DNA of 64,000 bases, from assembly GCF_022045235.1 (NCBI RefSeq), contig NW_027266297.1, positions 40,362,001 to 40,426,000 on the forward strand, given 5' to 3'. Both the position numbers and the translations under genes were made by a program. This DNA comes from Haliotis cracherodii. Taxonomy: Eukaryota. Below the pieces are notes generated by a model that saw nothing but the letters and a program-made list of their open reading frames with translations, did not search any database and was not told the DNA's origin. Positions within the stretch are counted from its first letter, which is position 1, and the number at the start of each line of letters is the position of its first letter. Positions 1 to 50,968 of this stretch are shown here, piece by piece.

Positions 1-925
1 GATCAGTGGGTTGGCTTTACCTGATCAGTGGGTTGGTTTTACCTGATCAGTGGGTTGGCTTTACCTGATCAGTGGGTTGGCTTTACCTGATCAGTGGGTT
101 GGTTTTACCTGATCAGTGGGTTGGATTTACCTGATCAGTGGGTTGGCTTTACCTGATCAGTGGGTTGGTTTTACCTGATCAGTGGGTTAAGATTTACCTG
201 ATCAGTGGGTTGGTTTTACCTGATCAGTGGGTTGGCTTTACCTGATCAGTGGGTTGGTTTTACCTGATCAGTGGGTTGGTTTTACCTGATCAGTGGGTTA
301 AGATTTACCTGATCAGTGGGTTGGTTTTACCTGATCAGTGGGTTGGCTTTACCTGATCAGTGGGTTGGCTTTACCTGATCAGTGGGCTGGCTTTACCTGA
401 TCAGTGGGTTGGATTTACCTGATCAGTGGGTTGGCTTTACCTGATCAGTGGGTTGGTTTTACCTGATCAGTGGGTTAAGATTTACCTGATCAGTGGGTTG
501 GTTTTACCTGATCAGTGGGCTGGCTTTACCTGATCAGTGGGTTGGTTTTACCTGATCAGTGGGTTGGCTTTACCTGATCAGTGGGTTGGTTTTACCTGAT
601 CAGTGGGTTGGTTTTACCTGATCTGTGGGTTGGATTTACCTGATCAGTGGGTTGGCTTTACCTGATCAGTGGGTTGGTTTTACCTGATCAGTGGGCTGGC
701 TTTACCTGATCAGTGGGTTGGTTTTCCCTGATCAGTGGGCTGGCTTTACCTGATCAGTGGGTTGGTTTTACCTGATCAGTGGGTTGGTTTTACCTGATCA
801 GTGGGTTGGTTTTACCTGATCAGTGGGTTGGCTTTACCTGATCAGTGGGCTGACTTTACCTGATCAGTGGGTTGGATTTACCTGATCAGTGGGTTGGATT
901 TACCTGATCAGAGAGTTGGATTTAG
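1..925. repeat. 22-bp minisatellite (~42 copies in window); each unit reads CAG|GTAAA on the gene strand
   Basis: Unit gatcagtgggttgg(c/t/a)tttacct repeated from position 1. Confidence 0.97.
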
Positions 926-1203
926 GCTGCTTCCATACTTCAGCAATATTGCATACAACATTAGACTTCCAGTACCTGTCTTCGATATTATGAACATGAC
1001 AGATTGACTATGTCATCACGACACTGCATGTACCTAATGTGCAGAGAATAAAGGTCATACACTCACTGAGGAGTTGATGAGATAGACAGGACACTGTTCT
1101 GTGACATTCATCCATCTCAGTTGGGCTAAGAAGCTGAATTACCTGTATGATAGGTTTGCTTAATAGTACTTCCTGAATCATGTGGTAAAGACTCTTCACT
1201 TAC

Positions 1204-1255
1204 TTGAGCTGCTGGCTTTTCTGGGGGAGACTTGATTCTCCTGACTCTTCGTGGA
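1204..1255 (-). CDS. CPLANE1: CPLANE1 coding exon 22 (52 nt)
   Basis: SPRRVRRIKSPPEKPAAQ; ttccacag| ... CAA|gtaagt; phase 2-0. Confidence 0.65.
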
Positions 1256-4200
1256 CTGTGGAATAACAGAATGCATAAGTGTGAGTGAGTGAGTTTGGTT
1301 TAATGCCACTTCGAACAGTATTTAAGTTATATCCCTGCGTACCAGCTTCATGTTAGAAGAGTGATGGAGGTATAGATGTTACAACATTGCTAAATCCCAC
1401 AGCAACTGGCATGATGCCGAGATATCAAGAAACATAATCAGGGCGAATCTGGGATTCCAACCAGTCATAGATTTCACAACTCGACACAGCAAACTGCAGC
1501 ACCTTGCCGGACTTGCGACCAGTGGTCCCGAACTTCTGTTTTACATCTTTGAAGACTATTTCTTACCAGCATGCAATAATGTCCAGCTATTCACTTCCAT
1601 CTCTGTGCTGACATGGTAAAATAACTAAGTGAGTATGGTTCAGTGCTAACAGTCTTTCAGTAATGTAAGTCATCTTCATGTAGGAGTTCAACAGGTCGTA
1701 GACATTTACCACTTTTGTGGAACCCATGATCATGTTCTTTGTGCTGAGAATCACACCTTGGGCTAATCTGGGAGTTCCAACTAATGGTCACTGCACAACT
1801 AACGGAAGCAACTCCACAAAGCCAATTGCAGAACCACAGACCACTTGGCGACCCTTGCCCCTATGGTTGAAAGACACACAAAATGTTACCTCAATAATGT
1901 CAAAAGCATAGCAACAAACCATGAAAAACGGTTTCTGTTTAAAGTTTGAAAGCAGTACCATTTATAATATTGCAACCATTTTTCTAAATCTTTACCTTTT
2001 CTTAATTCCATAGCTCTCCTGTACTCTCTGAGTCTTCACACTGAGAAGCTGCTGGCCGAACCGCTGCTTGTCCATCTCCGTCTGCTCCTTGACATACTGT
2101 CTATGAAATTCCTCTAGGTGGCGCTGCTTTTCCAGCTCCCTCTGGTGGACCTCCTGGTGGTGACCGATCACATACTCCGGTGGGACCAAGCGGCCAAATC
2201 CTGGTGGTTGTCCGATGTTCAGGAAGGCTGACTCTTGCTTGGGCATTTTCAGCAACGGCATCCCAAGGTGGCCATCTTGAGATGATGAGAACTGATTGGA
2301 CGGACTGTGGTCATATGGCGGGGGATGGATGGGGAACTGCCCCGGAGTTGTCTTATGGAAGAAATTGGACGGAGCCTGATTGAGATGAAGTAACGGCATT
2401 TCGGGAACTCCCTTCCCTTGCTGTTGGGTCGGATCATTCCATGCTGAGACAGGGATGTGAGGTAGTTTGAAGCCATCGTTCATATCTCTTCCTGCTGGTA
2501 TTCGTAGGAATTTGGGGAAGGGAGAATCAGCAGGATGTCTCAAGTCAGAGATACCAAGTGGCAGAGAGTTCTCTTTCCCTGGTGAAAGGCCATGCTGGAG
2601 ATTGGAGTGTTCTGTTGTTGTTCTTAAGTTCCGCATCTCTCTCAGCACCCCTCTTATTGGGGGCTGATGTGAGCGGTTAAGGTCATCCACGGTCATTGAC
2701 CTGTCCTGACCTCTATAGGATGGAGCTTGTTGTTGAGGTGTGATAGGATAACTCTCAACATCGGGACCATCAATAGCACCCATCATCGCCATCAAGCTCT
2801 TGTGTTGAACCTGGCAGGAAAAGTCAGTTTTATTCATCAGTCATCAGGTGTAGAATATATATTAAAACTTTCCCAAATCATAGTACTATCTTAAACAATA
2901 ACAATGTGAATTTTTTGTACAGCGCCAAATCCATCCCTAAACATGCTCAAACATCATTATTTGAGTCAATGGTTCAGTGTGCACTCAATTTTCATCTTCA
3001 CTCAACCCAAGCTGCCTGGTGAGGTGCTATCACATTGCCATCTAATCCTCCCAGGTAACCATTTACCATTGAGTGAACAGAGGCATATTTCAAACAAAGA
3101 CACTTGCTCAGGGAGACACCACAAGTGCTACATGTGCCTCAGGGCAGGGCAGGACAGACGCCCTGGAAACTCTCAGGAGTCAAGCCCCCAAACTTGATCA
3201 CCCATCCAACTACTAACCACGACCAATGTTCCTTAGCTTCACCTGATTTGTGACTGGGCGCTGTGCACAGGACCACGTGCCACCACAACATGCCTCCAAA
3301 TATTGCTGTTTAGAATAACTAAGACTAAACTGACTGAAACAGAAACAGAGTCAGTCATCTAGTAGGCAGCCTTCTTAAAACATAACCCTCAAAACTCTAC
3401 ATACCTTGCCAGTGCCAGTCCATGATAATTTTGCCTGGACACTAGGGCTGGGACGAGTACAAATTTACTACCCGGGTACCCACCACCTTATTAACCGACC
3501 CTACCCGGATACCTGCTGTTGATATTTAGAGATAGGTACAAACTGTCCGATATGGAAAAGTTTGAAAGTTTGACCTTATTCTTGGCAAAATGTATTTAGA
3601 TATATGTGTAAAACGATCTGGTCATGCATACACTGAAGTTTTATCTTTATTCAAACATATAAAAGTCAGACGGAATGGGTGCATTGTCAGAAAGAAAAGG
3701 GAACATTAGTGACTAGATAAATTTTGTCATTAAACAATATATCAAGTGTATAACCACCCGTCCGGGTAGTCCTGTGGGTACCCGGGTCCTAGTGAGGACC
3801 CACCTGACCCGAGTATCCGAGTTACCCGTCCCAGCCTTACTGGACATCTACACGGATTTTAAACATGCCAATAATCGCATTAAAAATTGATTATCTGTTT
3901 GAGAATAGGTAATTCTGTGCAACAGACATCGGGACCCTCCACACTGACCTCCATAATCCTCCTCATCTCCGAGCGCACAATGTTCTGCAGCTGTGACGCC
4001 AGATCTCCACCAACAGCTGACCCTCCGCTTTGCCGTGCATTCTCCGACTGGTGTATCGACTCCCTCAATGAAGGGCTTGGAGACCGGACTTTCCGACTCC
4101 TGGTGGTGCTGTTCGGGCTCAGACGTGGACTCCTGGAGTTACCTCCCCTGCGTGAGCCCCTGGAAGAGGAGGTCTTGGGGAGGGAGGAGTTGAGAGGCTG

Positions 4201-7200
4201 TTGTATGGCTTCTGCGGGCAACTGGACGGTTCTGTTCAGCAGGGACACACTACCTTGTCTCTGGGGGCTACCAGTGCTGAAAGAGAGCAGGCATGCATTA
4301 TCAAAAGTCTTAACAGTTTTATGTTTGTTTGTTGTTTAACAGCACAACTCCATTATTCCAGCTATATGACGGCGTTGGTAAATAATTGAGTCTGGATCAG
4401 ACAAGTCATCGATTGACATCATGAGTATCGATCTGCACCCTTGTGATACAATACCATTTGATCCCGGAGTAATTATGGTAACAATGTCATGTTCTTTGAT
4501 CATATAATTATTGTCATAGTTATTATAATTAGCATGACAAATCACCTACCCCCTGATGATGGAGAGTTGTCCTCCATCCAGTTCATCACTAGCCAGTGAA
4601 CTCACATCAATAGAACTGCTGTCATCGCGACTGTTGATGGATGGAATGAACGACATCGTGAAAATAAAACTGGACATGGGCACTAGAGTTCATCTCAATC
4701 TATGATAATTATTTAGTGCCTAAAATCTAAATACCATAATACATACAAATAATCAGGATAATGTTGAAACTTGTTTAATAATATTACTATCATCACATTC
4801 TTAGTCAGCATACAGAATTTTATATATTTATTTTCAATCCACACTTGATGCACATTTGATTTGACACAATAATTACCAATAAAAATTTTCCATATATTTT
4901 TTTTTTCCTTTTCTAAAATAGATTTGATTTTAGTTAAAATCAAATATAAAACTGATCACAATCTATCAAGCGATTCTTAAGACATAAAATGCATTAATAC
5001 TCTGTCTAAAATGGCTGTAGTTGATTGCCAACAATGACACTTAGTAATGGTCACATTGGTCATGAAGCATTTGGACATTAATACAAAACTCACCTATCAA
5101 GGACTTGCTTGTATATTTCATTCATATTCTCAACATCCAGAACTGCTGATGACTTCAACTCTATATCCCGACCTTGAGGGGACCGACTCAATGTCCTCAC
5201 CCCTAGGGATTCGTGGGAGGGGCTTTTCCCCCGGGGTGAGAGAGATGACCTTGTCATGCCCCCCGGGGGACTGGAAGCATTGTTGTTAAATGCAACATAG
5301 TCCGCTAGGCGGCGTCTGCTCCTGGACCTCCGACCTCCAGCCTTTGCATCCTCCACTTCTGAAAGGTGCAGCGGTTGTTTGTTCCCAGTGTATTTGTTCT
5401 CTAGGAGCCACAGAGACAGCAGGATGAGGTGGGCGGGGATCGATATCTTCATCGTGGGTCTCAGATCAAACTGATGCTCCTTCTTCCCGAGGCCCAGCGA
5501 GTGAGGCTTCCTGCTCCAATTCTCGAGCCATTCTAACTGATTCTTCAGAGGTGTATACCGACGGCCAAAGTTGACATTCAGGGTCCAGAAATGATCGTTA
5601 TCTTCCTGAGGATACAATGCCTCTTCAGACTGATAAAACCTTGATGCCAGCTCTGACAGGTTCTGTTGGCTGCCTTGTCTTGATGATCGAGCAGGTGTTC
5701 CTACCAACTCATTAATGCCATTCTCACTTTCATACCTCCGAACTGGAGAAGAAGGTTTATCTGAAGATCCCATTTCAACCACACTCTTACTTCGGAAGAG
5801 ACCCTTAGCTTTCATCAGCCGCATATGGTCGCTGTCTCCCACAGAACCCTGTCTCCGGAAAACTGAACTGTCCTTCCCTCTGGGCAGAGTCTCAACAGAT
5901 CCATCTCTTGGTGTCAGTACAACCAGAGAATGTTTTCTGTTTCCGTGAGATGATCTTTCAAGAAAAGTTGTCATTTCCCTGTTCATGATAACTTCCGCCC
6001 ACGGCAATAATACAGGGTATCTCTTTTGAATATGTCTCTCTAATTCTGATTCAATCAGACGGCCAAAACTGACAGAACAGAAAGTGTCCATAAATTCAAT
6101 GAAATATCTCTTCGTCTCATATGGCCTGGAACCAATATTGAGATCTGGAGGGTCTTTTGATGAATTTGCAAAAACAAATTCGTCATAATTCCCGAAACAG
6201 ATTCTCCTTTTCTTCAAAACTTTTCCAGCAACTTGACACTGCTTGTGAAAATAAACAGACAGCGACTTTCCACGAGGAGATGCTTTAAAGAATGTGACTG
6301 ATTTCCGTCCACCTGTTGGATCATCATCATCGTCTACATCAGCATCTACTTTAGCTGACCTCCCATCATCCTCAGGCTGGACAATGACCGTCTGCCACTC
6401 GTGCAGGATCTTGTCCACCTTCTCCTGGACCTCTGCGTCGAGGTTCTCCATGTCGTAGAAATACTCCGCCAAGATGTCTGCTGTGTCTTCAGACGGGGGT
6501 AGCTCCAGCAGGAGAGAGAGGACGACCTTGTACACACAACCCTCGTCTGGCAAGAAGCGGCTGAACGCCAGAAGGTGGACAGCCCACTGGAGGTTGGTGA
6601 AACACTCCTGTAGCCATCGCTCAGACCCGTTCTCCTACAAGTAGATGTCATGTATGCAAACAGTGAGATCGTCACGCATATATTAGTATTTCTCATGAAA
6701 TCAATTCCATAATTTTCCAAATGTTACTGTTGAGAAGTATTCACATCAATAATCTTTACTAATTTAATCACTGTTTGCTTGTTTTTAGGAAACATGTTTT
6801 CCTCAGCATGAATACACAGAGATAATCCAGCTTATGTTTTCTTCATTTCATCAATTTTATAATAAATTCACTTTCACTGCCCTGTTTCTAAATTGAATGG
6901 CAATAATATAATTTTCATCAATTTTAGCTTGTTTGTTTACACAACATTAATTAAAAGACATACAAAGTGTATTCTCTTTAATAGTATTTAGCAGTATATT
7001 ACATTTATTCCAAATTGCAATTATTGTTATGCACTTTTGCCTACACCTTACCACATAAGTAGTGCTTACATCAGACCATCTTTGGATTTCAGTGAACAAT
7101 TTGTTCATTGTTACTCTTGGACATAAAACTACCAATATGGCCTCGTATGAACAAACAACAATGATTAAGTCTTCCTCTTTCCAACCTTCATGGAAGCACA

Positions 7201-10200
7201 ACTGGTCCTGCTACCTTTGTCTCTTACAAAACAAGATGGGCTTACACCAGACAACTTTTGGTGTGAATGAATTCGAGATTCCTTTAGGGTAAAAAGCAAA
7301 CAAAATCAGCTTGTATGAAAATAAGACAATGCCCTGTTCCCACTGACCTTGCCCTGTCTGTGGAAGCTGAGCTGGTCAAGGTACTTCTGTCTCTGCCGCA
7401 GACACAGGGAGAGTTTGTCTCGGGCGTGGAGCATCCACACCACACAGCAGACGTCACGGAAAGCTGACAGCACCAGCTGCACGGACTCCCCATCCTCATG
7501 TTCTGCCAGGCTCAAGTCCGATGCCAAGTGGTCCATCAGTCCACTGAGGAACTTCGGCAGCTCTGTACAGGGTCCTTCAGTGTTGGCCTGAGGAAGTCAA
7601 CCTTAGATCACATCTATACCTGGTGCTTGTATTCATATGCGTGGGATAAGCTACGCCTTAAACTGTACTTCAGTTATACCATGTCAGGCTGAAGGAAAGT
7701 ACAATACAGTCTGTGGACACACTATCACTGTATGGTCCTGACAGACCAAGGATCATAATCACGTCAAGTCTGAGAGTCAAACCATCTTCGGATCCTGCTA
7801 TGCGTAAAAGTCACAACTTTATAATAAAATCCAATTTACATGAGGTTCTAAAGTGTTGATCACTTTAGAACCCCTTTATTCATTATAACTTGCTACAAAG
7901 CATTTTCCACATCAAAGTGATCCCATATCAATTGTCTGGGTGCATGCATGTTGCTTCCCTCTGACAATAAGCAAATAAACATTAGTGGACTTTTATTTTT
8001 ATCACAACCATATCATTTCCAACTTTAAAATAATTCCACAAAGCCCGAAACTCAATCCATGAATATGAATGGCTTCACTCAGAATAATCTCCCTAGTACA
8101 CCTAATCAACGCTGACCCTACACTGACCTTGAACTGTGTGGCCTTGTGCTGTGCCTGCAGGAGTCGGGTCACATACCAGTGCGTGACGTGCAGGGAGAGG
8201 TGACTGGCCTGCAGGAAACTCAGCATCAGCTGGATCAGAGATGCCGCCTTCCTCCGCAGCTGCATCTCCATCCCCACTGCGGATCTCACCGACTCCTGTG
8301 GGCAACAACGTCATCAGCAAACAGCAGAATCGTGACATACAACAGTGGGCGTTCCCAGGCCCTATCAGCAAACAGCACCATCTTCACATACAACAGTGGG
8401 CGTTCCCAGGCCCTATCAGCAAACAGCACCATCTTCACATACAACAGTGTTCCCAGGCTCAAACACACCTGGGACATCATGACTCTCAAAATATACTGTT
8501 AAAGAAATTTGCGATCCAGTCTGCATTTGTGATGTAATTGCAACTTTTGTGGAGTAAAAGCAGCTCTGGTTGATGAGGCGAGGTGAAATGGGGTTTAACG
8601 TTGTGTCCAAGATTATTGCACTTATATAGCGACATACATGCACGTGTGTGTGTGTGGCTGCTTGTACTAGTCAGGACTGAAGCCGATTTAAAATGCTATC
8701 TCACTGACATACTATGCCGCAATTTAACATGAATACCCCCTCAAACACAGTATACTGACTCCGAGCCGACCAGTCCTTGTTTTAGCCCTTAATGCAGAGC
8801 GACAGACAGGGTAACAAGTACCATCATTTAACGTCTTTTGGTATGACGCAGCCAGGGATCGAACCCTGGACCTTCCGCTCTCCGGGCAGTCGCTCTACCA
8901 CTAGACCAGTGAGGCGGTCCTCTAGTCGATGACATATCACGGCTTCCCACACCTTTTAACCATCTGGGTCATTGAGACTCACAAGCAATTGTCTTATCAA
9001 ACAAATCAAATGTTTGTGAGTCTGGGTTTGCTTCACAATGTGACTAGAGAGCCTTGTTAACTCTGTCAGATATACCAGCTGTATCTCTTACAAATAATAC
9101 AGAGCTCTCCAATCTCAAAATTATCAGTCTCATTGCGACACAAATATGTTGTCAGTTTGTTTTGTAGTGCTGTGATTGGTTTGTGAAATGGGACCATGAC
9201 TGTGACTAACAAGTGAGCAATTTTCATACTGTACTGTTGCATAAATATGGACTTTATACACTTTTTGCACAGACTATCACAAAAATATTCATGGAATATG
9301 TACATTCACAAGTTTGAGTGAGTGAGTATGGTTTTACGCCACTTTTAGCAATATTCCAGCAATATCACGGCAGGGGACACCAGAATTGGGCTTCACACAT
9401 TGTAGCCATGTTGGGAATCAAACCCGGGTCTTCGGCGTGACGAGTGAACGCTTTAACCACTAGGCTACCCGACCGCCCCTGCACAAGTTTGAAGGACAGA
9501 ATAGGAATTAGTGTGATTCAACAACATCTTGCTGCCACAACAAACTATAGTATGTCCACAGTGGTCTTAGCTACAATTGTCATAAGTCTACGCAAGAGTG
9601 ACAGTGGCTCAAGAGATGCATGAATGGGACAGGGTAGAGATCTGGCCTGCAACTGGGGGAAAGGGGTAGAAATCTTTGGGGACAAGGGGAGGCAACTCTG
9701 ACACAACAGTCTTCAGTTAAGACTCACCTGGCTTGTAGCTGAAGGCTGGGGGCAGTAGAGGGGAGGGGCAGGTAGGTAGAAGTCCTTGGGGACAAGGGGA
9801 GGCAACTCTGACACAAAAGCCTTCAGTTAAGACTCACCTGGCTTGTAGCTGAAGGCTGGGGGCAGTAGAGGGGAGCGAAGGGGTATGAGTCCTTGGGGAC
9901 AAGGGGAGGCAACTCTGACACAACAGTCTTCAGTTAAGACTCAATTGGCTTGTAGCTGAAGGCTGGGGGCAGTAGAGGGGAGCGAAGGGGTAGAAGTCCT
10001 TGGGGACAAGGGGAGGCAACTCTGACACAACAGTCTTCAGTTAAGACTCACCTTGCTTGTAGCTGAAGGCTGGGGGCAGTAGAGGGGAGCGAAGGGGTAG
10101 AAGTCCTTGGGGACAAGGGGAGGCAACTCTGACACAACAGTCTTCAGTTAAGACTCAATTGGCTTGTAGCTGAAGGCTGGGGGCAGTAGAGGGGAGCGAA

Positions 10201-22200: not shown

Positions 22201-25200
22201 TATGTATCAGGATGAGTCAATATTTACTACATATGAACAACGTTCAGCTTATAAGTCCTGTATATCCCACAAGTGACAAATGTATTGAATTTGTCATTAC
22301 TAGTTGACAACTTACAAAGACATAAATACAGTGAAATATTTGCCTGTGACAATTAAATCTATCTCAGGACCACCAAGGGACTTTCAGTATGGTAACCATG
22401 GTGACTCAAAGTGCAACGAGAAACATTAAGACATGATAAGCAAGTGTATCATCCATACAGCCCAGCCAGTCAATTTGTATGGCTTTATCAAACAGTTAGC
22501 CAGATTCTTTAACAAGTAACAAATTTTCGTTGTGTTCATTGAAATTCCTGCATTCTGATTAGCTGAAATGGTCACGTGTTATTGCATTCATTTCTTAATG
22601 AATGTAAAAAAAATTTACAAACCCGTAGAGGTTATGAATTCTCTGATGAAATCCTCCTTGGGGCACTTATTGCATTTTCCTTGCTCAAGAAAATCTACAT
22701 GACAAAGTTGTAACCATTTTCCTTAATAAAAAATGTTACCACACAAAAAACTTTGTTTTTGTATGATATACGACCACCCTTACGGGGCCTCACCACCAAC
22801 GGCGCCTCACGCCAGGGGGAGCAACTCTCACCCAAATCACTTTCCATATGTCAAATGCTGACGGAATGTGGGGAGGTGGGTGGCCGTGCCCCAAGGAGGA
22901 TTTCATCAGAGAATTCATAACCTCTACAGGTTTGTAAAATTCTCTTTCTGATTAAATCCTCCTTGGGGCACTTATTGCATCAGGACAGACTCCCAAAGAT
23001 AATCTAGGAAGTGGCATCCGTCAGCAACAGGCGTAAATAAATACATCGTATTTGATTATTCAACAGAATAAAATATTGAGTTCAATAAATGGAACCAACC
23101 TTATCGTGAGGCACCACCGTCGAAAGGCGGGGGCTAGAGACAGGGCGTGGTCGACCATATATTATGATAAAGCCTGTTTTTGCGGCTTGTCATAAGTTGA
23201 GAACTCGAAACACCTCCCACCCCCACACTTTTTTTGAACAAGTGATATAGGGGCGTAGATCACGAGAGACCATAACCAGCGCTGAGCTAGGCCAGAGGGT
23301 CCCCGAGGACTGAAGGAGCGCGTGCGCAAAATACGAGTATTATCGAGTAGTACGGACTGATATTTATCGACCGCAGAAGATAAAATCCGGACCATTACCG
23401 AGCAGTATAACCGGAGGACTGTCTAAAATCTCGAATGCTCAATCGGCTAGAGATTAGAACTTTGCCCCGTTCGGAGAACTGACTGACCAAACCGAGTACG
23501 CTCGCTTGAGTGTTTGTTGAGTTGGTAAGGTTTGATGAATCGTGCTCGGCTGGCTCCAAATAGCCGCGGAGCAGATCTGCTCAATGTGCAGAGCCGCGGC
23601 GTACGCTTTTGACGCAGCCACTGCTCTAACCTAATGAGCCTTCAACCTGGTAGGGGGGTCCCTGCCTGTAAGCGTATACGCTGTACAAATGGTTGAAACT
23701 ATCCACCTCAAGATAGATTGTTTACTCGCAGGTGAGCCAACCTTCCTACCGCGGTAACAGCAAAATAGTTGGTTATCCTTACGGACACCAATATTTCTGC
23801 TGATATAGGCCTTGAGAGTCGTGCGGACATCCAAGACATGAGCATGTCTTGCAGTGGTCCCCGACGAGGAAGGCTGTGAAAGAGCAGGTAGCAGGAGCCG
23901 TTCACGTGGAAGCGTGTGCGACCCTTTGACGGTAAGAGTCCGGTAGTCGAAAACTGACTCTGTCCCGGTGATATTTATCGACCGCATGGAAGACAGTTAT
24001 TTCGGGATCGGCTGACATAACACGAATGTCGCCTACCCGTCTGCCGGACGTTACCACCACAAGGAACGCCGTCTCCCAGCTCAACAGCTGAAGAGAGAGA
24101 GACGACAGATCCCGAAAGGAAGGACCGGACAGCCAATCGAGAATGATTGACAAGTCCCAAGGGGGACTGATCCGCCGGACTGGCGGTCGGATCCTGTCCA
24201 CACCTGCTAAAAAGCGCTGCACTAATGGGTGTGCACCCAGAAGTGCCCCGTCGACAGTGACGTGAAAAGCTGCGATAGCTGTAGAGTACCCCCGGACTGT
24301 TGATGCGTCCAGGCCGTCATCTAGTCGCGACTGGAGAAACTCAAGCACAGATACGAGATCTGCAGAAAAAAAGATCTGCAATCCCTCTATCGACACACCA
24401 GGGCGCATAGCAGGCCTATCTATCGTACTGACCGTTTGTCGAATCTCTCCGCGAAGCCAGTATTGTGTCTGCAACTCGTGCAGGAATACCGCTCTTCTGG
24501 AGGCGATTCCTGACAGTGGCCAAGCCACCCATTGAATCCTGGGATTCGGGTGGAGGGCCCCGTTCTGGGATAGGAGGTCCGGTCATAAAGGTAATATAAC
24601 AGGAGGCTGAGCCAGAAACCTGAGTATTACTTGAAACCCACTCTGCGCCGACTAAAGAGGTGCCAGGAGCACAATTAGTCGTGCAGGCTGAGTGCTTAGC
24701 TGAGACAGGACCTTGGAAATCAAAGGTACTGGGGGGAATGCCCACAGAATTCTGTCCGTCCAATCTAGCTGGAAGCCGTCCGGTGCCACCGACCTCGGGT
24801 CGTGGACTTGGGAGCAGAACGTTGGTGTCTGGTGATTCATCACAGACGCAAACAGATCCACCTGTAACGGCCTGTATAACAGGGAGAAAATCCCGAATAT
24901 CCCCGGGTCGAGCCTCCACTCGTGAGGAGCGAGGATCTGGCGAGACAGAGCGTCCGTACGGACGTTGTCCACCCCCGGGAGATAAACAGGTAGCACCCTG
25001 ATATCATGAGAGTCGCACTATAGTAGGAACTGCCACGTCTTTCGTCGAAGCGACGGAGACGCCGTTCCCCCCTGCTTCCGGATGTAAGTCATCGCCGTTT
25101 GGTTGTCCATCTCTAGACGAACCACTTGGCCACGAAGCAGACCCGGGAAGCGTTGGAACACCAACCTGACCGCTCTCAGTTCTAGCACATTGATATGCAG

Positions 25201-28200
25201 TTTGATCTCCTGCTGGGACCATAGTCCCGAGGCAGTGTGATCATTCAGAACGCCTCCCCAGCCGGAGAGTGACGTGTCTGTTTGAACTGTGAGAGACGGA
25301 ACGGGAGTGTCGAGGTGGAGCCCCCGGGACAGATTCCCGACCTCGGTCCACCACTGGAGGTGTGTAATGAGCCACTACGGAGTCTCGAGCACAGTCTCGA
25401 GATCTTCCGAGTTCGCCCAAAGTCGACAGAGTGCTTGTTGAATGGGACTCATTCTCAAGCGCCCCGCCAGACCAAATCCACTGTCGCCGCCATGTTGTCC
25501 AGTAACTGGAGCTATGTACGAGCAGTGTGACTTGCGCTTAAGGGACTTGATATCTTGTGACAGAGATACACGTCCTCTCACCATGTTGAAATTAGCCACT
25601 AGGAAGACTAGATTCTGAGTGGGGCTCAGATCTGACTTCTTGAGACTGACCATCCACCCTAGAGTGATCAGAATATCTATCACTTGTTGTGTAGCTATCT
25701 GACTCAGGGATTGCGATAGAGCTCTTAGTAACCAGTCGTCGAGGTACGGATGGCAGAACCGACCTTTTGACCTGGCCACTTGGGCGGGAATCAACATCAG
25801 CTTGGTGAACACCCTCGGGGCCGTGAAGATCCCGAATGGTAGAACCCTGAACTGATAACACCTCCCGTCGAAAGAAAACCTCAGGTATTTCTTGAACTCG
25901 GGGTGTATTGGTATGTGGAGATAGGCGTATTTAAGTCTATTGACGTTAGCCATTCTCCTGTCTCAACAGGTGAGATCACTGTTTGGTGACTAGGAAACAA
26001 GTCGAGTAGAAGCCCTCGCTTTCCTGTCCCCGGTTCGATTGCAGCTTTCATAAGTGCGTCGACCTCGGCACGGAGGAATTCCGCCTTCTCTCGGGTAGCA
26101 GGCACCGGAGTGTGCTTTATCCCGGAGAAGGGGAGGGGCGGATGATGTTTCCACCGAGGCAAATGGCCATCCCTTAAAATGGACGGGGTCCGGGGATTGT
26201 GATGTAACTGTCTCCGATTCCTTCAGGAATAGAGCCAGTCGGCCGCCTACGGGGACATCCGGCTGGAGGCAGTGGACCCCGGCTGTTGGCAGTTCGATAA
26301 CTTGCGACTGTGGGTTCACCCGGGGCTCTTCGGGCGCTAATGGGAACCCATCGTTCCCAGCCCCGCGAATAAGCTGTTGGTCTCGACCAGCTGCCTTGCC
26401 CCGGCCCGTGCCTCTCTTGCTCCTCCCGGCGCCCTTATACCTGAAGGAAGCGGCGGCTTCCAAGCAGGTGTGGACGTCTGACCCGTGCGTTAGCGTAGGA
26501 GGGGACAATTGGAGAGGCCCGCTTACGCGGTTTTAACGCTTGGTACCTCCAACATGGCCTCATGAGTCTTTGATGGAAGTATACAATTGAGCGGCCTCTC
26601 GGACCACCTGCTGAGCCCCAGGGAAGAGGGTGGCACCCTCTTATACGGCAAAGCAAGTAAGTCTTGGCGTGTGTAAGTCGAGTATTTAGATACCGACATC
26701 CACCGCCTGCGCATGCCCATAACAGCGCACATCATCTGCGAGGCACAGCTACGAATAGCGTCCCGTGTAAGATAACTGAACTTCCGTTAGTTGCGCGGCC
26801 AGCTCCGAAGAGTCGACCGGCCCCTCTCCCGCTAACTCCCTCTGTACAGCCGACAGATACACGGAGTGTACGGACACACGGAGCTGTTGGCATGCATTAT
26901 GATATTGCTCCTCGAAGCATATGTAAGCAGCCTTCAACTCCGCACCGCACGCGGGAAAGTGGGGGCAACAGCCGGCCCTGCTTGACCTTAGTCAAGTTGG
27001 GTGTCTCCGACTCTGGCATGGGCGCAGCCACCTGAGGCAGTATCTGGACAATCCTGTCCCGCACGTGCCTCTGCACCCGGCCCGATGCCGAGGTGCCGGA
27101 GGTTCAAGGGAACCCACCTGGCACCGGGCTAGGTATCCACTAGTGGAAGCCTCGGCCTCGGAAGAGGCGTCTGGCTCCGCTAGGGAAAATTGTGCGTCGG
27201 TAGTGCACGGGCCGAGCCGGCGCCCGCCACCACTACGCTGAGGATCGACCGCGAGCCAGAGCCGAAGCTCGGTCTTGGATCGTCCCCGAGACAAAGGGAA
27301 CCAACCTTGCTCCGGGGCAGGTATCCACTAGTGGAAGCCTCGGCCTCGGAAGAGGCGTCTGGCTTCGCTAGGGAAAATTGTGCGTCGGTGGTGCACGGGC
27401 CGGCGCCCGCCACCACTACGCTTGGGAGCGACCTCGAGCCGGAGCCGAAGCTCGGTCTCGGATCGTCCCCAAGACAAAGGGAACCCCCCTGGCTCCGTGC
27501 TACGAATCCACTAGTGAAAGCCTCGGCCTCGGAAGAGGAGTCTGGCTCCGCTAGGGAAAATTGTGCGTCAGTAGTGCACGGGCCGGTGCCCGCCACCCCT
27601 CCGCTGGGGAGCGACCTCGAGCCAGAGCCGAAGCCCGGTCTCGGATCGTCCCCGAGATCAAGTGGCCTGCCTCGGCCGACGCCGGGCATAACACAGATCT
27701 CGAAGCCGCGTCCGGCGCCGACAACGGGGAAGGCTCAGCCCGTAGCTCCTGCCGGAGCCGAGACTTCACCTCCTCCATCATCGACGCCATCGGCGACTTA
27801 AGTAACGCAGAACAGTCTGCCAAAGACAGTGCAGGAGAGGGTGCAGTGCTTACTACGGGGACCCTCTAGCCTTCTCCCCCGGTCCCCGGAGAGGGAGCGG
27901 GGGGAGACAATCTCGGCAGCTTTTTTACCCTTTTTAGATAGGGAGGGGGGGGGGATGTCTTAGTAGATCTGATATCTACCCCCGCCTTTATAGACCTCTT
28001 TAAAGTGGAACAAGTCAACTTGTCTCTTTTGGGGGGTAAAGGCAATGTCCTCCGCCAGACATATCAGGCAGCATTCGTGCCTGTCTTAGAACAACCCGTA
28101 CACAGTTTGAAGGTCTTTGTAAACAAGACCGTAATTTCTGAGGTGGGCGGGAAGGGTATTAACGTGTATCAGTGCGATATAAAGATTGGAAAGATACGTG

Positions 28201-31200
28201 CTTAAATTGTGAAACTAGAAGCAAAGGCGTAATGTAGAATGCGATTTGTAACGCGATACTAATAGCCAATGTCGTAGTTTAATTATAACACCAAAGGGGC
28301 GTGTTACGCGCTAAGGTGTAAAACCCGTAAAAAAGGTAAGTGTAGTTTATAAATTAACACACCACCTTGGGTTTTGTAAAGGAAAAAATTGTAGACCAAT
28401 GCTGTATGATATAACAAAACCCCAAGCCGTTTCTTAATGGCCTTGGTGTTACATGTATCAGCCCGTGGAACTACAATATGGACGCCATTACGGCCATTTG
28501 AATTCAAAGGTACCGTGCACGTGGCGTCAAACAATGCGAGGTATTACGCCTTTGCAATGAAAGAAATGTACCATACATACAGTTTGGTCAGCCATGGTTC
28601 TTGTCGAACGATAGATTTCTCTTATTTTGTCTTGTGTGAAAAATCAACACATCTGTCTCTTACAGATGACATAAGGAAAGTGATTTGGGTGAGAGTTGCT
28701 CCCCCTGGCGTGAGGCGCCGTTGGTGGTGAGGCCCCGTAAGGATGGTCGTAAATCATACAAAAACGAAGTTTTTTGTGTGGTAACATTTTTTATTAAGGA
28801 AAATGGTTACAACTTTGTCATGTAGATTTTCTTGAGCAAGGAAAATGCAATAAGTGCCCCAAGGAGGATTTAATCAGAAAGAGAATAAGCTATGCCCACC
28901 GAAGCGGACTACATTTATTACTACGTATGTATGCAGCATTAAATAACTAATTATTTTCCTTATAACCTTTATCACAACCTGCAACATGGCATCTAACACG
29001 TACCTGCCAAACTTCCGGTCAGCGTTCTGGATGCCACAGTCCTTCATTTCTGACACAAGGACAGTCTCAGTCAGTGGTGACAAGAACAGAAGACTTGTGT
29101 CAGACGGACGCTTCTGATTGGCTGCTACAGCTATCACCTGACCATCATGAGAGTAGCATGCGACATAGGCTCCCTTCGTGTTGATTGGCTGACAGCCAGT
29201 GCTGATGTTCTGTACAGGGTACTCAATGCAGCTCCACTCTGTGTGATAACTTGGAACACTGTGGACAGAATGGTAATGGTGAATTCACACATGGCCAACT
29301 GATAAACGAATAAGATAATACTCAGCATATAGGCTAAAACACACACCCTTGGTTCTGAAGCACCTGTCACCCTACAATTCTGTTTGATAAACAGGGGGAT
29401 AACCCAATATCCAAGGATGGTAACCATGGAGCTGCTATTGTAACTGGGGGCGGTCGGGTAGCCTAGTGGTTAAAGAGTTCACTCGTCACGCTGAAGACCA
29501 GGGTTCGATTCCCGACATGGGTACAATCTGTGAAGCCCATTTTGTGTCCCCCGCCGTGATATTGCTTGAATATTGCTAAAAGCGGCATAAAACCATACTC
29601 ACTCACTCACTATTGTAACTGTGGCGCCTGATGATGCGGCACCTGGTGGAGCGCCAAAGGTGAGGGGCTTGGAGATAAGCCTAGAGACTTAAGATCGACA
29701 GACACAATGGAATGAGGCAGATTTTGCCGATAAGCATCGGTGTCTGATGACAGTAGTCATGGTGACGTCATTGCCGAAGCGGTGCCATCATAGTACTCGT
29801 CGTACAGGGTCATGAGCAGACTGATGATCAGGGTGATGACCAGGGTGTGAGGCACTCCGCCCACATAGTGGGTGTCAGAGGGGACAAAGTGGGAGTGGTA
29901 ACCCTGAGGGCTCACCCACAAGATGACTGCATGCAGGTGTTCCTGAGGGTTGGGGGAGGCGACAGTCACAGGCTTGCGAGGAGGGCACAAAGCCTGGCAC
30001 TGGAGTTGTTGATGAGTCCTTTTGCGTAGTTTGGCTAGGTAGACGGTGAAGAGACAAGTGAGCACACTCGGTGCAACTCTAGACTAAGGCCCAGGGGACC
30101 CTGCAGTCAGGGCATAGACCATAGATCCTGGGCTGATGTCCTCCCATGACAGTCCATGCACTTGCAGAGAGGGCACAAGAGGTCATCATCGACCCCAGAC
30201 ACTGGCTCAGAGATGACCACCGCGTCCATAATTTCTCAATATCAAAACAGATCAGTGATCCCAAACAACAAACAAAGCCTATTCCAATCAAAATTTGAGA
30301 GCGTAGTAAAACATGTCCATCCAATACGGGTGATGAAGGAAACAGTGACAAGTAATACAGGAGCATGCTGGGAGCGAGGTGGTCTGAGGGTGTGTTCGGG
30401 TGAATGTTTTACATTGTTCTACACTATTATATGATCGCAGCAAGAAGGAAAATTGCTACTGTTGAGGAGGGATAAGTTAAAAATGAAAGGATTTCTTTCT
30501 TTTGCCTTACTTGAAACTTTAAAAGATGACAGTAACTCTATAATAGCTTCTGGCTGACCTGGTCAGTCTATGTGATGCTAGCATTACATCTTACCTGTCC
30601 TTGTATATGTTGTGGAACTCTGAGAATCTCAATAAGACTGTCGTCACACACAGCTTGTCTGCATTGTTGAAGGTCAGGGAGCACTGACAGCATTCACCAA
30701 GAACCTACACAGAGAGGTGTACTCATAGAAAACAGTCACATCAGTAAGTTTGGTCACCAAGAACCTACACAGAGAGGTGTACTCATAGAAAACAGTCACA
30801 TCCGTCAGTTTGGTCACCAAAAACCTACACAGAGGGGTGTACTCATAGAAAACAGTCACACCAGTCAGTTTGGTCACCAAGTGAGTGAATGACTGAGTAT
30901 GGTTTTATGCCGTTTTAGCAATATTACAGCAACATCACAGCGGGGGACACCATAAAATGGGCTTCAGACATTGTACCCATGTTGGGAATCGAACCCGGGT
31001 CTTCGGCGTGACGAGCGAACACTTTAACCACTAGGCTACCCGACCACCCTTTGGTCACCAAGAACCTTCACAGAGAGGTGTACTCATAGAAAACAGTCAC
31101 ATCCATCAGTTTGGTCACCAAGAACCTACACAGAGAGGTGTACTCATAGAAAACAGTCACATCCGTCAGTTTGGTCTCCAAGAACCTACACAGAGAGGTG

Positions 31201-34200
31201 TACTCATAGAAAACAGTCACATCCGTCAGTTTGGTCACCAAGAACCTACCAAGAGAGGTGTACTCATAGAAAACAGTCACATCAGTCAGTTTGGTCTCCA
31301 AGAACCTACACAGAGAGGTGTACTCATAGAAAACAGTCACATCAGTAAGTTTGGTCACCAAGAACCTACACAGAGAGGTGTACTCATAGAAAACAGTCAC
31401 ATCAGTCAGTTTGGTCACCAAGAGTGAGTGAGTGAGTATGGTTTTACGCCGCTTTTAGCAATATTCCAGCAATATCACGGCGGGGGACACCAGAAATGGG
31501 CTGGTCACCAAGAACCTACACAGAGAGGTGTACTCATAGAAAACAGTCACACCAGTCAGTTTGGTCACCAAGAACCTACACAGAGAGGTGTACTCACAGA
31601 AAACAGTCACACCAGTAAGTTTGGTCACCAAGAACCTACACAGAGAGGTGTACTCATAGAAAACAGTCACATCAGTCTGTTTGGTCACCAAGAACCTACA
31701 CAGAGAGGTGTACTCATAGAAAACAGTCACACCAGTCAGTTTGGTCACCAAGTGAGTGAATGACTGAGTATGGTTTTATGCCGTTTTAGCAATATTACAG
31801 CAACATCACAGCGGGGGACACCATAAAATGGGTTTCAGACATTGTACCCATGTTGGGAATCGAACCCGGGTCTTCGGCGTGACGAGCGAACACTTTAACC
31901 ACTAGGCTACCCGACCACCCCTTGGTCACCAAGAACCTACACAGAGAGGTGTACTCATAGAAAACAGTCACATCAGTCAGTTTGGTCATGGTCCCATTTA
32001 CAGTGAGAGAATTGAGAACATTTCAGTTGTGGCATGGTGTGTCAGCTTAATGAGGGTGAAAAACTGAAGAATTCACCTTGTAGACATTTCCTCTCAGTTG
32101 AAGGAACCCATAAACATTAGAACATTGTAACATTTTCCTGGATATCGGGGAGAAACAAGTGTTTCTTATCTAAAGATCTATGAAGAAATCTCTGATACAA
32201 TCAGTTTTTATTGTAAGTAATAGCTGTAGCATTAAGCTATTCAAATGTCCATTCACAAATCTTGGATAGCTTTAGTTTTGTATATCTTGTTCTATGAGGA
32301 TTAAAAAAATGAAAGAATCGGTTCTCAGGCAATGGCTTTCGAAAATATAGTGCGAGCGGAGGGGCAGTGTTTTGGGGGGGCTTGTTCAAACTAGTACGTA
32401 ACCAAATAAACAGTTGTGTGCCATCAAACTCCTATAGCTGCCATGACCATAACACGAGTTGTGCAGTAAAGCAGCGCGCCAAGCTCCTCACAGCGATAAT
32501 CCGTTCGCGGAGCTCTCTATACTATCGCTGCCACCAGTCAAAACTCCCCACTGTGAATAGGTGGCCACAACCATGCTTGGAGTTGAACTCGCAACCGACT
32601 GACCGTTATGTTTACAAACAATTGACGACTGTCGTGACACTTATGGCTGCTAAATTACTTTCTTCGTTTGTCAATTTGAATTTCTGTTTCATTAAAACTA
32701 TCATGTTATTGATATAGTAAGAATGTAAGGGAGAAGTTGGTTGATTTTCCGTTAGTCTGTTAGTCTCGAACCAATCTGATTATCAAAACAACCAAGTAAA
32801 TTCATCTTGAAAACATGGTCAGTCATAAACCTTTTCAAAATGAAATATAATGGCATTCCCAAAGACATAAACAAAAGTAAAAACTTTACTACATATGGGG
32901 TTAGAGGGCAAATTTCAAGATTCTTGTAATGGCTGCGCCCACACTGGTGACAGCGATGTTACCGAGAGTGTAACGAAGGTGTCACGCGCTGGGAAGGAGC
33001 CTGGCAGTGCGCATGTAAAGGGAAGTAACTGTGTGTCATATTGGATCTCACTGTTTTTAAGCATTAGAATTTTTTTTAAATGCGGACTGTGCCTAAGATC
33101 ATGGTGTCAATGTTTGTAGGTCAGCAAGATGTGTGGCAGGTTCCATCACACTCACCTGGCTGGAGTAGAAGATGGCAGCCACACTGGTCTCCCGGCACTC
33201 TGGTGATGCCAGGGGAATCTTGTTGGGGATGTTCACCCGTGTCCATGCCCCTGCCAGTGTAGCTGATTTAGTGGACCCGAAACTATCGTTTGGGTCTTGT
33301 TGCCAGAGGAAGATCTGAGACCAGTTGATGACAACCAGGGCCCGGGAGCAGTCATCTGCTACAACCAACTTGCTGGTGCCTGAAACAAAGGAGTGTGAGT
33401 GAGTGAGTGAGTTGGGTTTAACGCCGCTTTTAACAGTATTCCAGTTATATCGCTGTGTGTCAGCATGGGTATGGTGCTAACAAACCTAGAAACATAATCG
33501 AGGTGAACCGGGATTCGAACCAACTATCATAGGTTCCTGGAGTGCCCAAGGGATCCAACTCTGCACAGAGAATCGCGGAGCTTAAGACAACTGGGCCACC
33601 CGTGCCCCCATAAAGCAAAGGAAGAATGTGTACATATGGAATATTATAGCAGAAATTTACTGTTGACAAGATTCACCTCATTTAAAATCAGGTCTGAGCT
33701 AATCCAGTCACAATCTCATGGAAGGAGATAGCATCAATGTTTTTTGTTCTGGCTCTTGGTCATTTCACAAATATTTTTTCTGATATCAAACATTGTTTAA
33801 CAATAAAGTCAGCACTTCCACCAGAAAACACCAGAAATGCAGGACAGACGTAGGATGTTACCTGGTTTGAGTTTGTCTATGGAGACATGGTTCACGAGTC
33901 CTGTCACCATCTTCAGGCTGTCCCTGTCTTTGTGCCACACAAACAGATCTCCAGACCGCATCAGACCCACCAGGAACAGACCTGCAAGTGGGTGAGGAAA
34001 ACAAAGGTGAAAACGGATTTTCATGTGTTTCTCTTAATCTGTGTTGTGTTTTCTGAGAGAAATGTTTCCCCTGCACACTCATATTAACAGATGCTTAAAC
34101 AAAACATATTATTTAATTTAATCTAACATTGATTGATTGATTGATTGAGTATGGTTTTATGCCACTTTTAGCAATGATCCAACAATATCACAGTGGGGGA

Positions 34201-44459: not shown

Positions 44460-44910
44460 TAACATGCATTTGTTCCTCGTGTTTTGCATCCTCGTGTTTT
44501 TCATACAATATCTACATCTGTTCCTTGTGTTTTTCATAAGATATGCATCTGTTGCTCGTGTTTTTCATAAGATATGCATCTGTTCCTCGTGTTTTGCATA
44601 AGATATGCATCCGTTCCTCGTGTTTTGCATAAGATATGCATCTGTTCCTCGTGTTTTGCATAAGATATGCATCTGTTCCTCGTGTTTTGCATAAGATATC
44701 CATCTGTTCCTCGTGTTTTGCATAAGATATGCATCTGTTCCCCGTGTTTTGCATAAGATATGCATCTGTTCCTCGTATTTTGCATAAGATATGCATCCGT
44801 TCCTCGTGTTTTGCATAAGATATGCATCTGCTCCTCGGGTTTTGCATAAGATATGCATCTGTTCCTCTCGTTTTGCATAAGATATGCATCTGTTCCTCGT
44901 GTTTTGCTTA
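44460..44910. repeat. 31-bp minisatellite (~14 copies), with 2-3 more copies at 45378-45458
   Basis: ataagatatgcatctgttcctcgtgttttgc. Confidence 0.95.
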
Positions 44911-48539: not shown

Positions 48540-49130
48540 GTGTTCTCCTCAACTAACGCACATGGAGTTTTCTCTCCTCAACATACACACGTGGAGTTTT
48601 CTCTCCTCAACATACACACGTGGAGTTTTCTCCCCTCAACACAAGCACGTGATGTTTCTCTCAACATATACGCCCGTGGCGTTTCTCTCCTCAACATATG
48701 AAGGTGGAGTTTTCTCTCATCAACATGTACGCACGTGGAATTTTCTTTCCTCAACATATGCACGTGGTGTTTCTCTCCTCAACATATGAAGGTGGAGTCT
48801 TCTCTCATCAACATGTACGCACGTGGAGTTTTCTTTCCTCAACATATGCACGTGGTGTTTCTCTCCTCAACATATGAAGGTGGAGTTTTCTCTCATCAAC
48901 ATGTACGCACGTGGAGTTTTCTTTCCTCAACATATGCACGTGGTGTTTCTCTCCTCAACATATGAAGGTGGAGTTTTCTCTCATCAACATGTACGCACGT
49001 GGAATTTTCTTTCCTCAACATATGCACGTGGTGTTTCTCTCCTCAACATATGCAGGTGGAGTTTTCTCTCCTCAACATTTGCACTTGGTGTTTCTCTCGA
49101 CATGTGGTGTTTTCTTTCCTCAACATTTGG
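48540..49130. repeat. ~29-30-bp minisatellite with an 88-bp higher-order unit, rich in CACGTG/CATATG
   Basis: gtggagttttctctcctcaacatat/gcac variants in triplets. Confidence 0.92.
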
Positions 49131-50827: not shown

Positions 50828-50968
50828 NNNNNNNNNNNNNNNNNNNNNNNNNNNNNNNNNNNNNNNNNNNNNNNNNNNNNNNNNNNNNNNNNNNNNNNNN
50901 NNNNNNNNNNNNNNNNNNNNNNNNNNNNNNNNNNNNNNNNNNNNNNNNNNNNNNNNNNNNNNNNNNNN
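50828..50968. other. Assembly gap (N run)
   Basis: About 140 N. Confidence 0.99.

What the first reader, a model, noticed from the sequence alone, without database searches (positions are those of the whole stretch)
1..31990. Recurrent splice-junction-anchored tandem arrays: introns of one gene built from repeated copies of their own splice sites
Seen: four unrelated minisatellites (units 107, 78/71, 49/45 and 60 bp) each begin exactly at a CPLANE1 exon boundary, and each unit is a copy of that junction (three donors, one acceptor). A fifth array (22 bp, window edge) also carries CAG|GTAAA on the gene strand. These are all the large arrays inside the gene, so splice-site anchoring looks systematic rather than random. 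Established: tandem duplication across an AG|GT junction is a recognised model for intron gain or expansion. Inference: this lineage has either (a) a transcription- or splicing-coupled mutational process that seeds arrays at junctions, tolerated because exon definition picks the innermost copy, or (b) arrays that act as decoy or alternative sites tuning productive versus NMD-targeted isoforms by copy number, a VNTR-based splicing rheostat.
Basis: partly seen in the sequence, partly recalled or inferred. Interest (0 to 1): 0.85.

Follow-up and report, generated by a model that had tools for sequence, protein, structure and literature searches.

The report
Splice-junction minisatellites in abalone CPLANE1
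Several introns of an abalone cilia gene consist largely of head-to-tail copies of the gene's own exon-intron junctions; this is real, but it is an already described kind of repeat ("mirage" minisatellite), so it is a dense new example and not a new principle.

Summary
The core observation holds. The window carries a CPLANE1-like gene on the minus strand, 93% identical to Haliotis asinina XP_067677557. Exon ends fixed by that ortholog show that the 107-, 78-, 49- and 60-bp arrays each start inside an exon. Each unit copies that junction (three donors, one acceptor).

The 22-bp array carries a donor-like motif but copies no junction. The gene also runs far beyond the stated span (window 36495 to about -25695). 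Over the whole gene, 8 of 19 arrays are junction copies. Random placement of units in the array-free introns predicts 2.9 (P=0.0016).

About 106 decoy donors score at least as high as their authentic site. Use of essentially any decoy gives a premature stop. The decoy motifs are neither specially conserved nor specially decayed.

In 200 kb of random chromosome, 10% is minisatellite, but donor-like units are no commoner than chance.

Best reading: these are "mirage" minisatellites, known from amphioxus and human F7 intron 7, tolerated because the exon-proximal copy is used. A mild pull towards junctions is likely. The rheostat idea has no support.

This scan has already reported the same thing at eight or more other loci of this genome. 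No RNA evidence could be obtained.

The parts
1..36495 (-). In-window part of the CPLANE1-like gene. Exon 1 starts at 36495. The gene continues left of the window to about -25695, which is G000:C34:40336305.
   Evidence: tblastn of P0001, P0120 and mollusc orthologs. Names and Pfam Joubert domain. Genome placement.
9661..10794 (-). 107-bp array, 10.5 copies. Each unit is the last 96 nt of exon 15 plus the first 11 nt of the intron. The authentic donor is at 10694|10693. Seven decoys score at least as high as the authentic site; two copies have lost the GT.
10694..10921 (-). Exon 15 (228 nt, phase 0 at the donor). The coded segment is conserved as a single copy in orthologs.
14061..15426 (-). 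78-bp array (with 71-bp variants; higher orders 149 and 305 bp), 18 copies. Each unit is the last 28 nt of exon 11 plus 50 nt of intron. The authentic donor is at 15399|15398. Thirteen decoys are identical to the authentic 9-mer.
15399..15644 (-). Exon 11
16741..19097 (-). 49-bp array with 45-bp variant units, 48.6 copies. It fills 2337 of the 2513 nt of intron 9. The authentic donor is at 19078|19077. Forty-one decoys carry the identical 9-mer ATG|GTGAGT.
19078..19261 (-). Exon 9
30694..31990 (-). 60-bp acceptor array in blocks (30694-30881, 31050-31423, 31502-31752, one copy near 31950). Each unit is 49 nt of intron tail plus the first 11 nt of exon 5. The authentic acceptor is the last copy, and the exon starts at 30704.
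30595..30704 (-). Exon 5, 100% identical in protein to H. asinina isoform X2 residues 188-223
30893..31062 (-). SINE-like dispersed element inside the acceptor array. Its twin at 31764-31933 is 99% identical, so one insertion was co-amplified with the array (period 871 bp).
31764..31933 (-). Second co-amplified copy of the same SINE-like element
1..924 (-). 22-bp array (full extent -248..924, 53 copies) in intron 21. It has a donor-like motif on the gene strand but is not a junction copy.
8313..8449 (-). 51-bp x2.7 array ending 17 nt upstream of the exon-16 acceptor (exon starts at 8295). It touches the polypyrimidine region but does not include the AG.
21819..21937 (-). Weak 10-bp array ending 11 nt upstream of the exon-7 acceptor
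13143..13396 (-). Weak 20-bp array 61 nt downstream of the exon-12 donor

Best explanation
These are 'mirage' minisatellites: ordinary, locally born tandem amplifications whose founding unit happened to span an exon-intron junction of the CPLANE1-like gene.

Shown: each array is built from the neighbouring exon edge plus its splice site. Each is unique to this locus. One end unit is the authentic junction.

Inferred: the productive mRNA uses the exon-proximal copy, that is, the first donor or the last acceptor. All other copies are removed as part of the intron, so the arrays simply lengthen pre-existing introns of typical size. They are neutral or slightly harmful passengers and not regulators. 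They are frequent here because this genome makes minisatellites at a very high rate (about 10% of random sequence, 41% of this gene's intron DNA) and its introns are short, so many founding duplications touch a junction. On top of that there is a moderate, unexplained excess of arrays at and near intron ends.
For: Arrays and their periods.

Exon ends from H. asinina RefSeq models and distant orthologs coincide with the first unit of each array. Junction-to-unit alignments cross the splice site with z = 7 to 58 for eight arrays.

The queried units (49-, 69- and 22-bp arrays) match essentially only their own locus, one weak 72% hit on contig C8 aside.

Ortholog proteins hold the repeated coding segment once only.

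Reading through any authentic donor meets a stop within 12 to 138 nt, and upstream acceptor copies bring in stops. The protein therefore requires the exon-proximal copy.

Array-bearing introns minus their arrays (68-1536 nt) resemble the array-free introns of the same gene (104-1786 nt).

Edge units are closest to the authentic or ancestral state while inner units are homogenised, as described for amphioxus mirages.

In the human F7 intron-7 minisatellite, the 5'-most of identical donors is chosen and the functional pseudo-sites stay silent: PMC1557585.

Minisatellites make up 19.7 kb of 200 kb of random chromosome.

An intronic minisatellite in another abalone gene varies in length between individuals: PMC6905558.
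Against: No RNA evidence from this species. Use of the exon-proximal copy rests on colinearity with a gene model from another Haliotis species and on analogy with F7.

The excess over the geometric null (8 against 2.87, P=0.0016) and the end-of-intron bias of the other arrays (P=0.002) say that plain random birth is not the whole story.

Seven of the nine arrays with units of 45 bp or more are junction copies. A purely passive model does not predict this.
Confidence: 0.7

Rival explanations
1. Splice junctions and intron ends are preferred birthplaces of minisatellites in this lineage. A process coupled to transcription or splicing (for example stalled polymerase or R-loops at splice sites, repaired by template switching) seeds duplications there. 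The anchoring is then mutational and not accidental.
For: Straddlers are 2.8 times the geometric expectation (P=0.0016). Seven of nine long-unit arrays are junction copies (P=0.0008). Non-straddling arrays lie at a mean relative position of 0.25 against 0.5 (P=0.002). Earlier notes of this scan report the same pattern in other genes of this genome; these are unchecked leads.
Against: The window part was picked because it looked this way. The held-out 26 kb alone gives 4 against 1.88 (P=0.078). Unit ends fall at varied distances from the splice site (exon share from 3 or fewer up to 96 nt), so nothing points to a cut at the junction itself. In 200 kb of random chromosome, only 2 of 28 arrays have a strong donor-like 9-mer against 1.7 expected, and neither of those two abuts an open frame. 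No mechanism is shown.
Confidence: 0.25
2. The arrays act as a copy-number-dependent splicing rheostat. Inner donors or acceptors are used at a rate set by copy number and divert transcripts to nonsense-mediated decay.
For: About 106 decoy donors score at least as high as their authentic site. Almost every decoy choice gives a premature stop, so decoy use would lower output.
Against: Splice motifs inside the units are not more conserved than the rest of the unit in any of seven arrays. Two 107-bp units lost the GT without consequence for the array. In the one system tested experimentally (F7), identical downstream pseudo-sites do not compete. Eleven other arrays in the same gene have no junction content.
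Confidence: 0.05
3. The introns were created by the arrays: intron gain by tandem duplication of an exonic AG|GT proto-splice site (Rogers model).
For: Some arrays make up nearly the whole intron (2337 of 2513 nt in intron 9; all but 68 nt of the intron before the 59-bp acceptor array).
Against: In every case the far end of the intron is unique sequence (68-1228 nt), and the exon beyond it is not part of the unit. Without their arrays, these introns have the same size range as array-free introns of the gene.
Confidence: 0.04
4. The arrays are assembly artefacts.
For: None specific. Repeats are where assemblies fail, and no reads could be laid.
Against: The arrays are 0.1-2.4 kb long within a 73-Mb contig. 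They carry structured internal variation: 149- and 305-bp higher orders, 45- and 49-bp unit types, and a co-amplified SINE. Intronic minisatellites that vary between individuals were shown by PCR and cloning in another abalone.
Confidence: 0.03

Closest known systems
'Mirage' minisatellites of amphioxus (Adh3; globin genes BflGb6 and BflGb9)
   Same: Tandem duplications that span an exon-intron boundary, at either the 5' or the 3' end of an exon. Many copies keep AG/GT signals. Regular splicing is reported as undisturbed. Inner units are homogenised and boundary units are not (PMC3087553).
   Different: Here the host is a mollusc and the density is much higher: eight such arrays in one gene, with up to about 48 copies and over 100 full-strength decoy donors. 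Splicing and instability were not tested here. The amphioxus authors call the generating mechanism unclear, and it remains so.
Human F7 intron 7 37-bp VNTR
   Same: The first unit spans the exon 7-intron 7 boundary, so the authentic donor is followed by identical pseudo-sites. The most upstream site is selected by a 5'-to-3' scanning-type process and the pseudo-sites stay silent (PMC1557585).
   Different: F7 has a handful of repeats at a single junction. It offers no acceptor-side analogue. Its experimental proof exists for mammalian cells only.
Intron gain or remodelling by tandem duplication of proto-splice sites (Rogers model; Drosophila cases in PMC2891723; human tandem-array introns of Zhuo et al. 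2007, whose content is cited from my own knowledge, the title being seen only in reference lists)
   Same: Tandem copies of AG|GT-bearing sequence provide extra splice sites inside genes.
   Different: In those cases the duplication makes a new intron or a new alternative intron between two copies. Here a pre-existing intron is lengthened, and only one end of it is repeat-derived.
Polymorphic intronic minisatellite of Haliotis discus hannai TSSK1-like (27-bp unit, intron 3)
   Same: An abalone intron carrying a long minisatellite whose copy number differs between individuals (PMC6905558).
   Different: It is not reported to contain a splice junction.

Membership tests
Mirage minisatellite (junction-spanning tandem array) | Head-to-tail array of minisatellite-size units inside a gene | tested here: met
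   TRF: 107, 78, 49 and 60 bp in the window. The 47-, 60-, 59- and 12-bp arrays lie left of it.
Mirage minisatellite (junction-spanning tandem array) | The unit spans an exon-intron boundary and one end unit is the authentic junction | tested here: met
   Exon ends from ortholog tblastn. Junction-to-unit alignments cross the splice site, z 6.8 to 58. The sequence was read directly.
Mirage minisatellite (junction-spanning tandem array) | Copies keep GT or AG splice signals | tested here: met
   218 decoy GT sites score at or above the weakest true donor of the gene, and 106 score at or above their own authentic site. About 14 and about 24 acceptor copies.
Mirage minisatellite (junction-spanning tandem array) | Normal mRNA is spliced at the authentic copy | not testable with these tools
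Indirect evidence only: the H. asinina protein is colinear with single copies, and decoy use gives stops.
Mirage minisatellite (junction-spanning tandem array) | Concerted evolution of inner units, with boundary units left out | tested here: met
   In the 107-bp array the inner units are 94-100% alike but 87-92% identical to the authentic unit. The next-to-last unit matches the orthologs as well as the authentic one does.
Mirage minisatellite (junction-spanning tandem array) | Length instability between alleles or individuals | not testable with these tools
   Only one assembly was available.
[quoted passage not shown] | Both intron ends derive from copies of the same duplicated exonic segment | tested here: not met
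   The far junction shows no similarity to the unit (z below 2.5), and unique spacers of 68-1228 nt remain.
Transposon-derived dispersed satellite | The unit recurs at many other loci of the genome | tested here: not met
   Own-genome DNA searches with the 49-, 69- and 22-bp arrays return only the array itself, plus one weak 72% hit. By contrast, the SINE inside the 60-bp array has 3784 or more first-look candidates.
Regulated decoy-site / NMD switch | Decoy splice motifs under purifying selection relative to the rest of the unit | tested here: inconclusive
   The minor-allele fraction in motif columns against the rest differs in neither direction beyond circular-shift controls in seven arrays.

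The most novel reading that the evidence does not exclude
In abalone, exon-intron junctions and intron ends are true mutational hot spots for minisatellite birth. Introns then grow largely by amplifying their own splice sites. This would be a lineage-wide process, possibly coupled to transcription or splicing, that also gives a natural genome-scale test of how the spliceosome picks one site among dozens of identical ones.
Probability: 0.25. Interest if true: 0.65.

Novelty: new member of a known kind. Interest (0 to 1): 0.35.

Why it matters
The gene offers an unusually rich natural experiment on splice-site choice. Five donors are each followed by 7 to about 70 consensus-strength copies, and two acceptors are each preceded by 14 to 24 copies. 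Almost every wrong choice is punishable by a premature stop. If RNA data confirm silent decoys, the 5'-most-donor rule shown for human F7 would extend to molluscs, and a matching last-acceptor rule would be documented. The arrays also show how introns can triple in length within a lineage. For annotation, they warn that gene predictors and read aligners face many equally good junctions here. The principle itself is already in the literature, and this scan has reported it repeatedly for this genome.

Tried and rejected

Only the first 20 positions (1.2-16.1 Mb of contig C34) were analysed.

Pfam on single exons found nothing. The family was shown on the full ortholog instead.

ARAGORN finds no tRNA in the SINE-like element.

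Motif-conservation test for or against selection on decoys was inconclusive.

The only AG between one unit's donor and the next unit's coding part lies 17 nt after the GT, too short for an intron, and it lacks a pyrimidine tract.

Microhomology at array edges was looked at by eye only, and nothing convincing was seen.

The donor-motif scan of random arrays gave no enrichment (2 against 1.7 expected). The two hits do not abut open frames.

Exons were searched one by one by reference. The N run at 50828-50968 was left untouched.
Full report
WHAT IS THERE

TRF on the window lists large arrays at 1-924 (22 bp), 9661-10794 (107 bp), 14061-15426 (78 bp), 16741-19097 (49 bp) and 30694-31752 (60 bp, in three blocks). 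It also lists smaller ones.

An HMMER search with the 514-residue open stretch at 5093-6634 (minus strand) found a 2972-residue protein that is 93% identical. NCBI names it 'ciliogenesis and planar polarity effector 1-like isoform X1 [Haliotis asinina]', and its cluster mate is isoform X2. Both that protein and a mussel ortholog carry the Pfam Joubert domain. The window therefore comes from a Haliotis species other than H. asinina, and the gene lies on the minus strand.

tblastn of these models and of five more distant mollusc orthologs defines the exons. Exon 1 starts at 36495, not at 31990. The gene also runs off the left edge. A search of the window's own genome places the last exon 25.7 kb to the left, at G000:C34:40336305. 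I fetched those 30 kb.

I built no joined spliced model. Exons were handled one by one by reference.

THE FOUR ARRAYS

Reading the minus strand shows four junction copies:
- The 107-bp unit is the last 96 nt of exon 15 plus the first 11 nt of the intron.
- The 78-bp unit is the last 28 nt of exon 11 plus 50 intron nt.
- The 49-bp unit, with a 45-bp variant, holds the end of exon 9 plus the donor.
- The 60-bp unit is 49 nt of intron tail plus the first 11 nt of exon 5.

The ortholog alignments end exactly at the first donor (10694, 15399, 19078) and start exactly at the last acceptor (30704; exon 5 is 100% identical to H. asinina residues 188-223). Alignment of each junction against the unit consensus crosses the splice site with z between 35 and 58 relative to shuffles.

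The 22-bp array really spans -248..924. It lies 279 nt from the exon-21 donor. It lies 49 nt from the acceptor of an exon at -298..-488 that only a low-stringency search revealed. It carries CAG|GTAAA but does not resemble either junction.

THE REST OF THE GENE AS A HELD-OUT TEST

Four of them are junction copies:
- a 47-bp array starting at the GT of the donor at -1057;
- a 60-bp array made of donor-like sub-repeats starting at the donor at -2779;
- a weak 12-bp GTGAGT-type array at the next donor;
- a 59-bp array whose unit is an acceptor plus 21 exon nt, at -8618.

The other eight are not junction copies (units of 15, 19, 19, 22, 30, 30, 35 and 69 bp).

Over the whole gene, 19 non-transposon arrays sit in 17 of 38 introns. 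They make up about 21 kb of 52 kb of intron. Eight of the 19 are junction copies.

IS THAT MORE THAN CHANCE?

Arrays fill most of their introns, so closeness to a junction is partly forced. I therefore removed all arrays (and about 5 kb of retroelement) from each intron and asked how often a unit of the observed length, placed at random so that it overlaps the remaining intron, would straddle a junction.
- Whole gene: 2.87 expected, 8 observed (P=0.0016).
- Held-out part: 1.88 expected, 4 observed (P=0.078).
- Arrays with units of 45 bp or more: 7 of 9 straddle, against 2.35 expected (P=0.0008).
- The eleven non-straddlers also lie close to intron ends, with a mean relative position of 0.25 where 0.5 is expected (P=0.002).

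There is thus a real but moderate pull towards junctions in this gene. The only unbiased subset does not reach significance on its own.

BACKGROUND

I fetched 200 kb at seeded random positions of the same chromosome.

This sample holds 28 arrays covering 19.7 kb, about 10%. Minisatellites are therefore very common in this genome, and CPLANE1 is about three to four times richer still.

Only 2 of the 28 consensus units hold a donor-strength 9-mer on either strand, against 1.7 expected from length-matched control segments. Neither of those two abuts an open frame. Junction copies are thus not the bulk of the genome's minisatellites. Acceptor copies could not be scored without annotation.

LOCAL ORIGIN

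Own-genome searches with the 49-bp, 69-bp and 22-bp arrays return only the arrays themselves, apart from one weak 72% hit on contig C8 for the 22-bp query.

By contrast, the 157-nt element inside the 60-bp array has at least 3784 first-look candidates at 91-94% identity. Its two copies in the array are 99% alike and 871 bp apart. One SINE insertion was therefore co-amplified with the array.

WHAT THE DECOYS LOOK LIKE

I built a position weight matrix from 26 donors of this gene that are not in arrays. With it, 218 GT sites inside the five donor arrays score at or above the weakest true donor. Of these, 106 score at or above their own authentic site: 7, 13, 41, 0 and 45 for the 107-, 78-, 49-, 47- and 60-bp arrays.

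Reading past each authentic donor in frame meets a stop after 12, 138, 50, 24 and 20 nt. Upstream acceptor copies also bring in stops. Only the weak second copy of the 78-bp array would give an in-frame 26-residue insertion.

A functional protein therefore needs the exon-proximal copy. This is also what the H. asinina models imply.

Within units, the splice motif is neither less nor more variable than other columns once circular-shift controls are applied. I see no signature of selection to keep the decoys or to kill them.

In the 107-bp array, the inner units are 94-100% alike but 87-92% identical to the authentic unit. The next-to-last unit matches the orthologs as well as the authentic one does.

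COMPARISON WITH WHAT IS KNOWN

Earlier notes of this scan gave me the term 'mirage'. I checked the source.

Ebner et al. [quoted passage not shown] They refer to the Adh3 locus, where the term was coined. They report AG/GT signals in many units, apparently normal splicing, concerted evolution that spares the boundary units, and an unclear mechanism.

Borensztajn et al. 2006 (PMC1557585) show for the human F7 intron-7 37-bp minisatellite that the identical downstream pseudo-sites are functional. They never compete, because the most upstream donor is chosen by a 5'-to-3' scanning-type process.

A Pacific abalone gene has an intronic 27-bp minisatellite whose copy number differs between individuals (PMC6905558).

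The arrays here meet every defining feature of mirages that I could test. They fail the test for Rogers-type intron gain, because the far intron end is unique. They also fail the test for transposon-derived satellites.

VERDICT

The claim that all large arrays are anchored is a window effect.

The rheostat reading is unsupported.

The thing is a new, very dense example, in a mollusc, of a known kind of repeat. This scan has already reported the same pattern at eight or more other loci of the same genome. I did not check those notes.

Noticed in passing
window 23500-27800 (minus strand), inside intron 6: GC-rich (up to 0.61) retroelement remnant. It has reverse-transcriptase (PF00078) and weak RNase H-like matches, spread over several broken frames. 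It also holds a 183-bp x3 internal tandem repeat at 27106-27657. It lies in the same orientation as the gene. I only described it.
   Followed up: partly
window 30893-31062 and 31764-31933; 5'-truncated copy near 31440-31500: SINE-like element of about 157 nt with a tRNA-like box B and a (TCAC)n-type tail. It has at least 3784 first-look candidates genome-wide at 91-94% identity. ARAGORN calls no tRNA in it.
   Followed up: partly
window 59127-59769; L010:8788-9082; L007:4247-4468: Tandem arrays of about 52-74 bp at three unrelated places seem, by eye, to share a core around ACGATCG...TTAGCGCTA. This suggests a dispersed, probably transposon-borne satellite family, unlike the locus-specific arrays of the gene.
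   Followed up: no
window 44489-44911 (31 bp x13.6) and 48544-49098 (29/88 bp): Two more minisatellites lie to the right of the gene. I found no exon evidence there (no long conserved frames), so they could not be placed relative to splice sites.
   Followed up: no
window 50828-50968: Run of 141 N (gap or masked); left untouched.
   Followed up: no
L004-L023 (20 random 10-kb pieces of contig C34): Minisatellites (period 10 bp or more, length 100 nt or more) cover 19.7 kb of 200 kb, an unusually high share for an animal genome. Unit lengths are mostly 18-90 bp.
   Followed up: partly
window 14061-15426: The 78-bp units are open in the exon's frame and would code a Cys-rich 26-residue repeat. 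The 71-bp variant units break the frame and bring the first stop 138 nt past the donor.
   Followed up: partly
window -298..-488 (L003:9512-9702): A Glu-rich low-complexity exon (H. asinina residues 1917-1978) was missed by the standard tblastn and found only at low stringency. It differs from the ortholog by small in-frame indels.
   Followed up: partly
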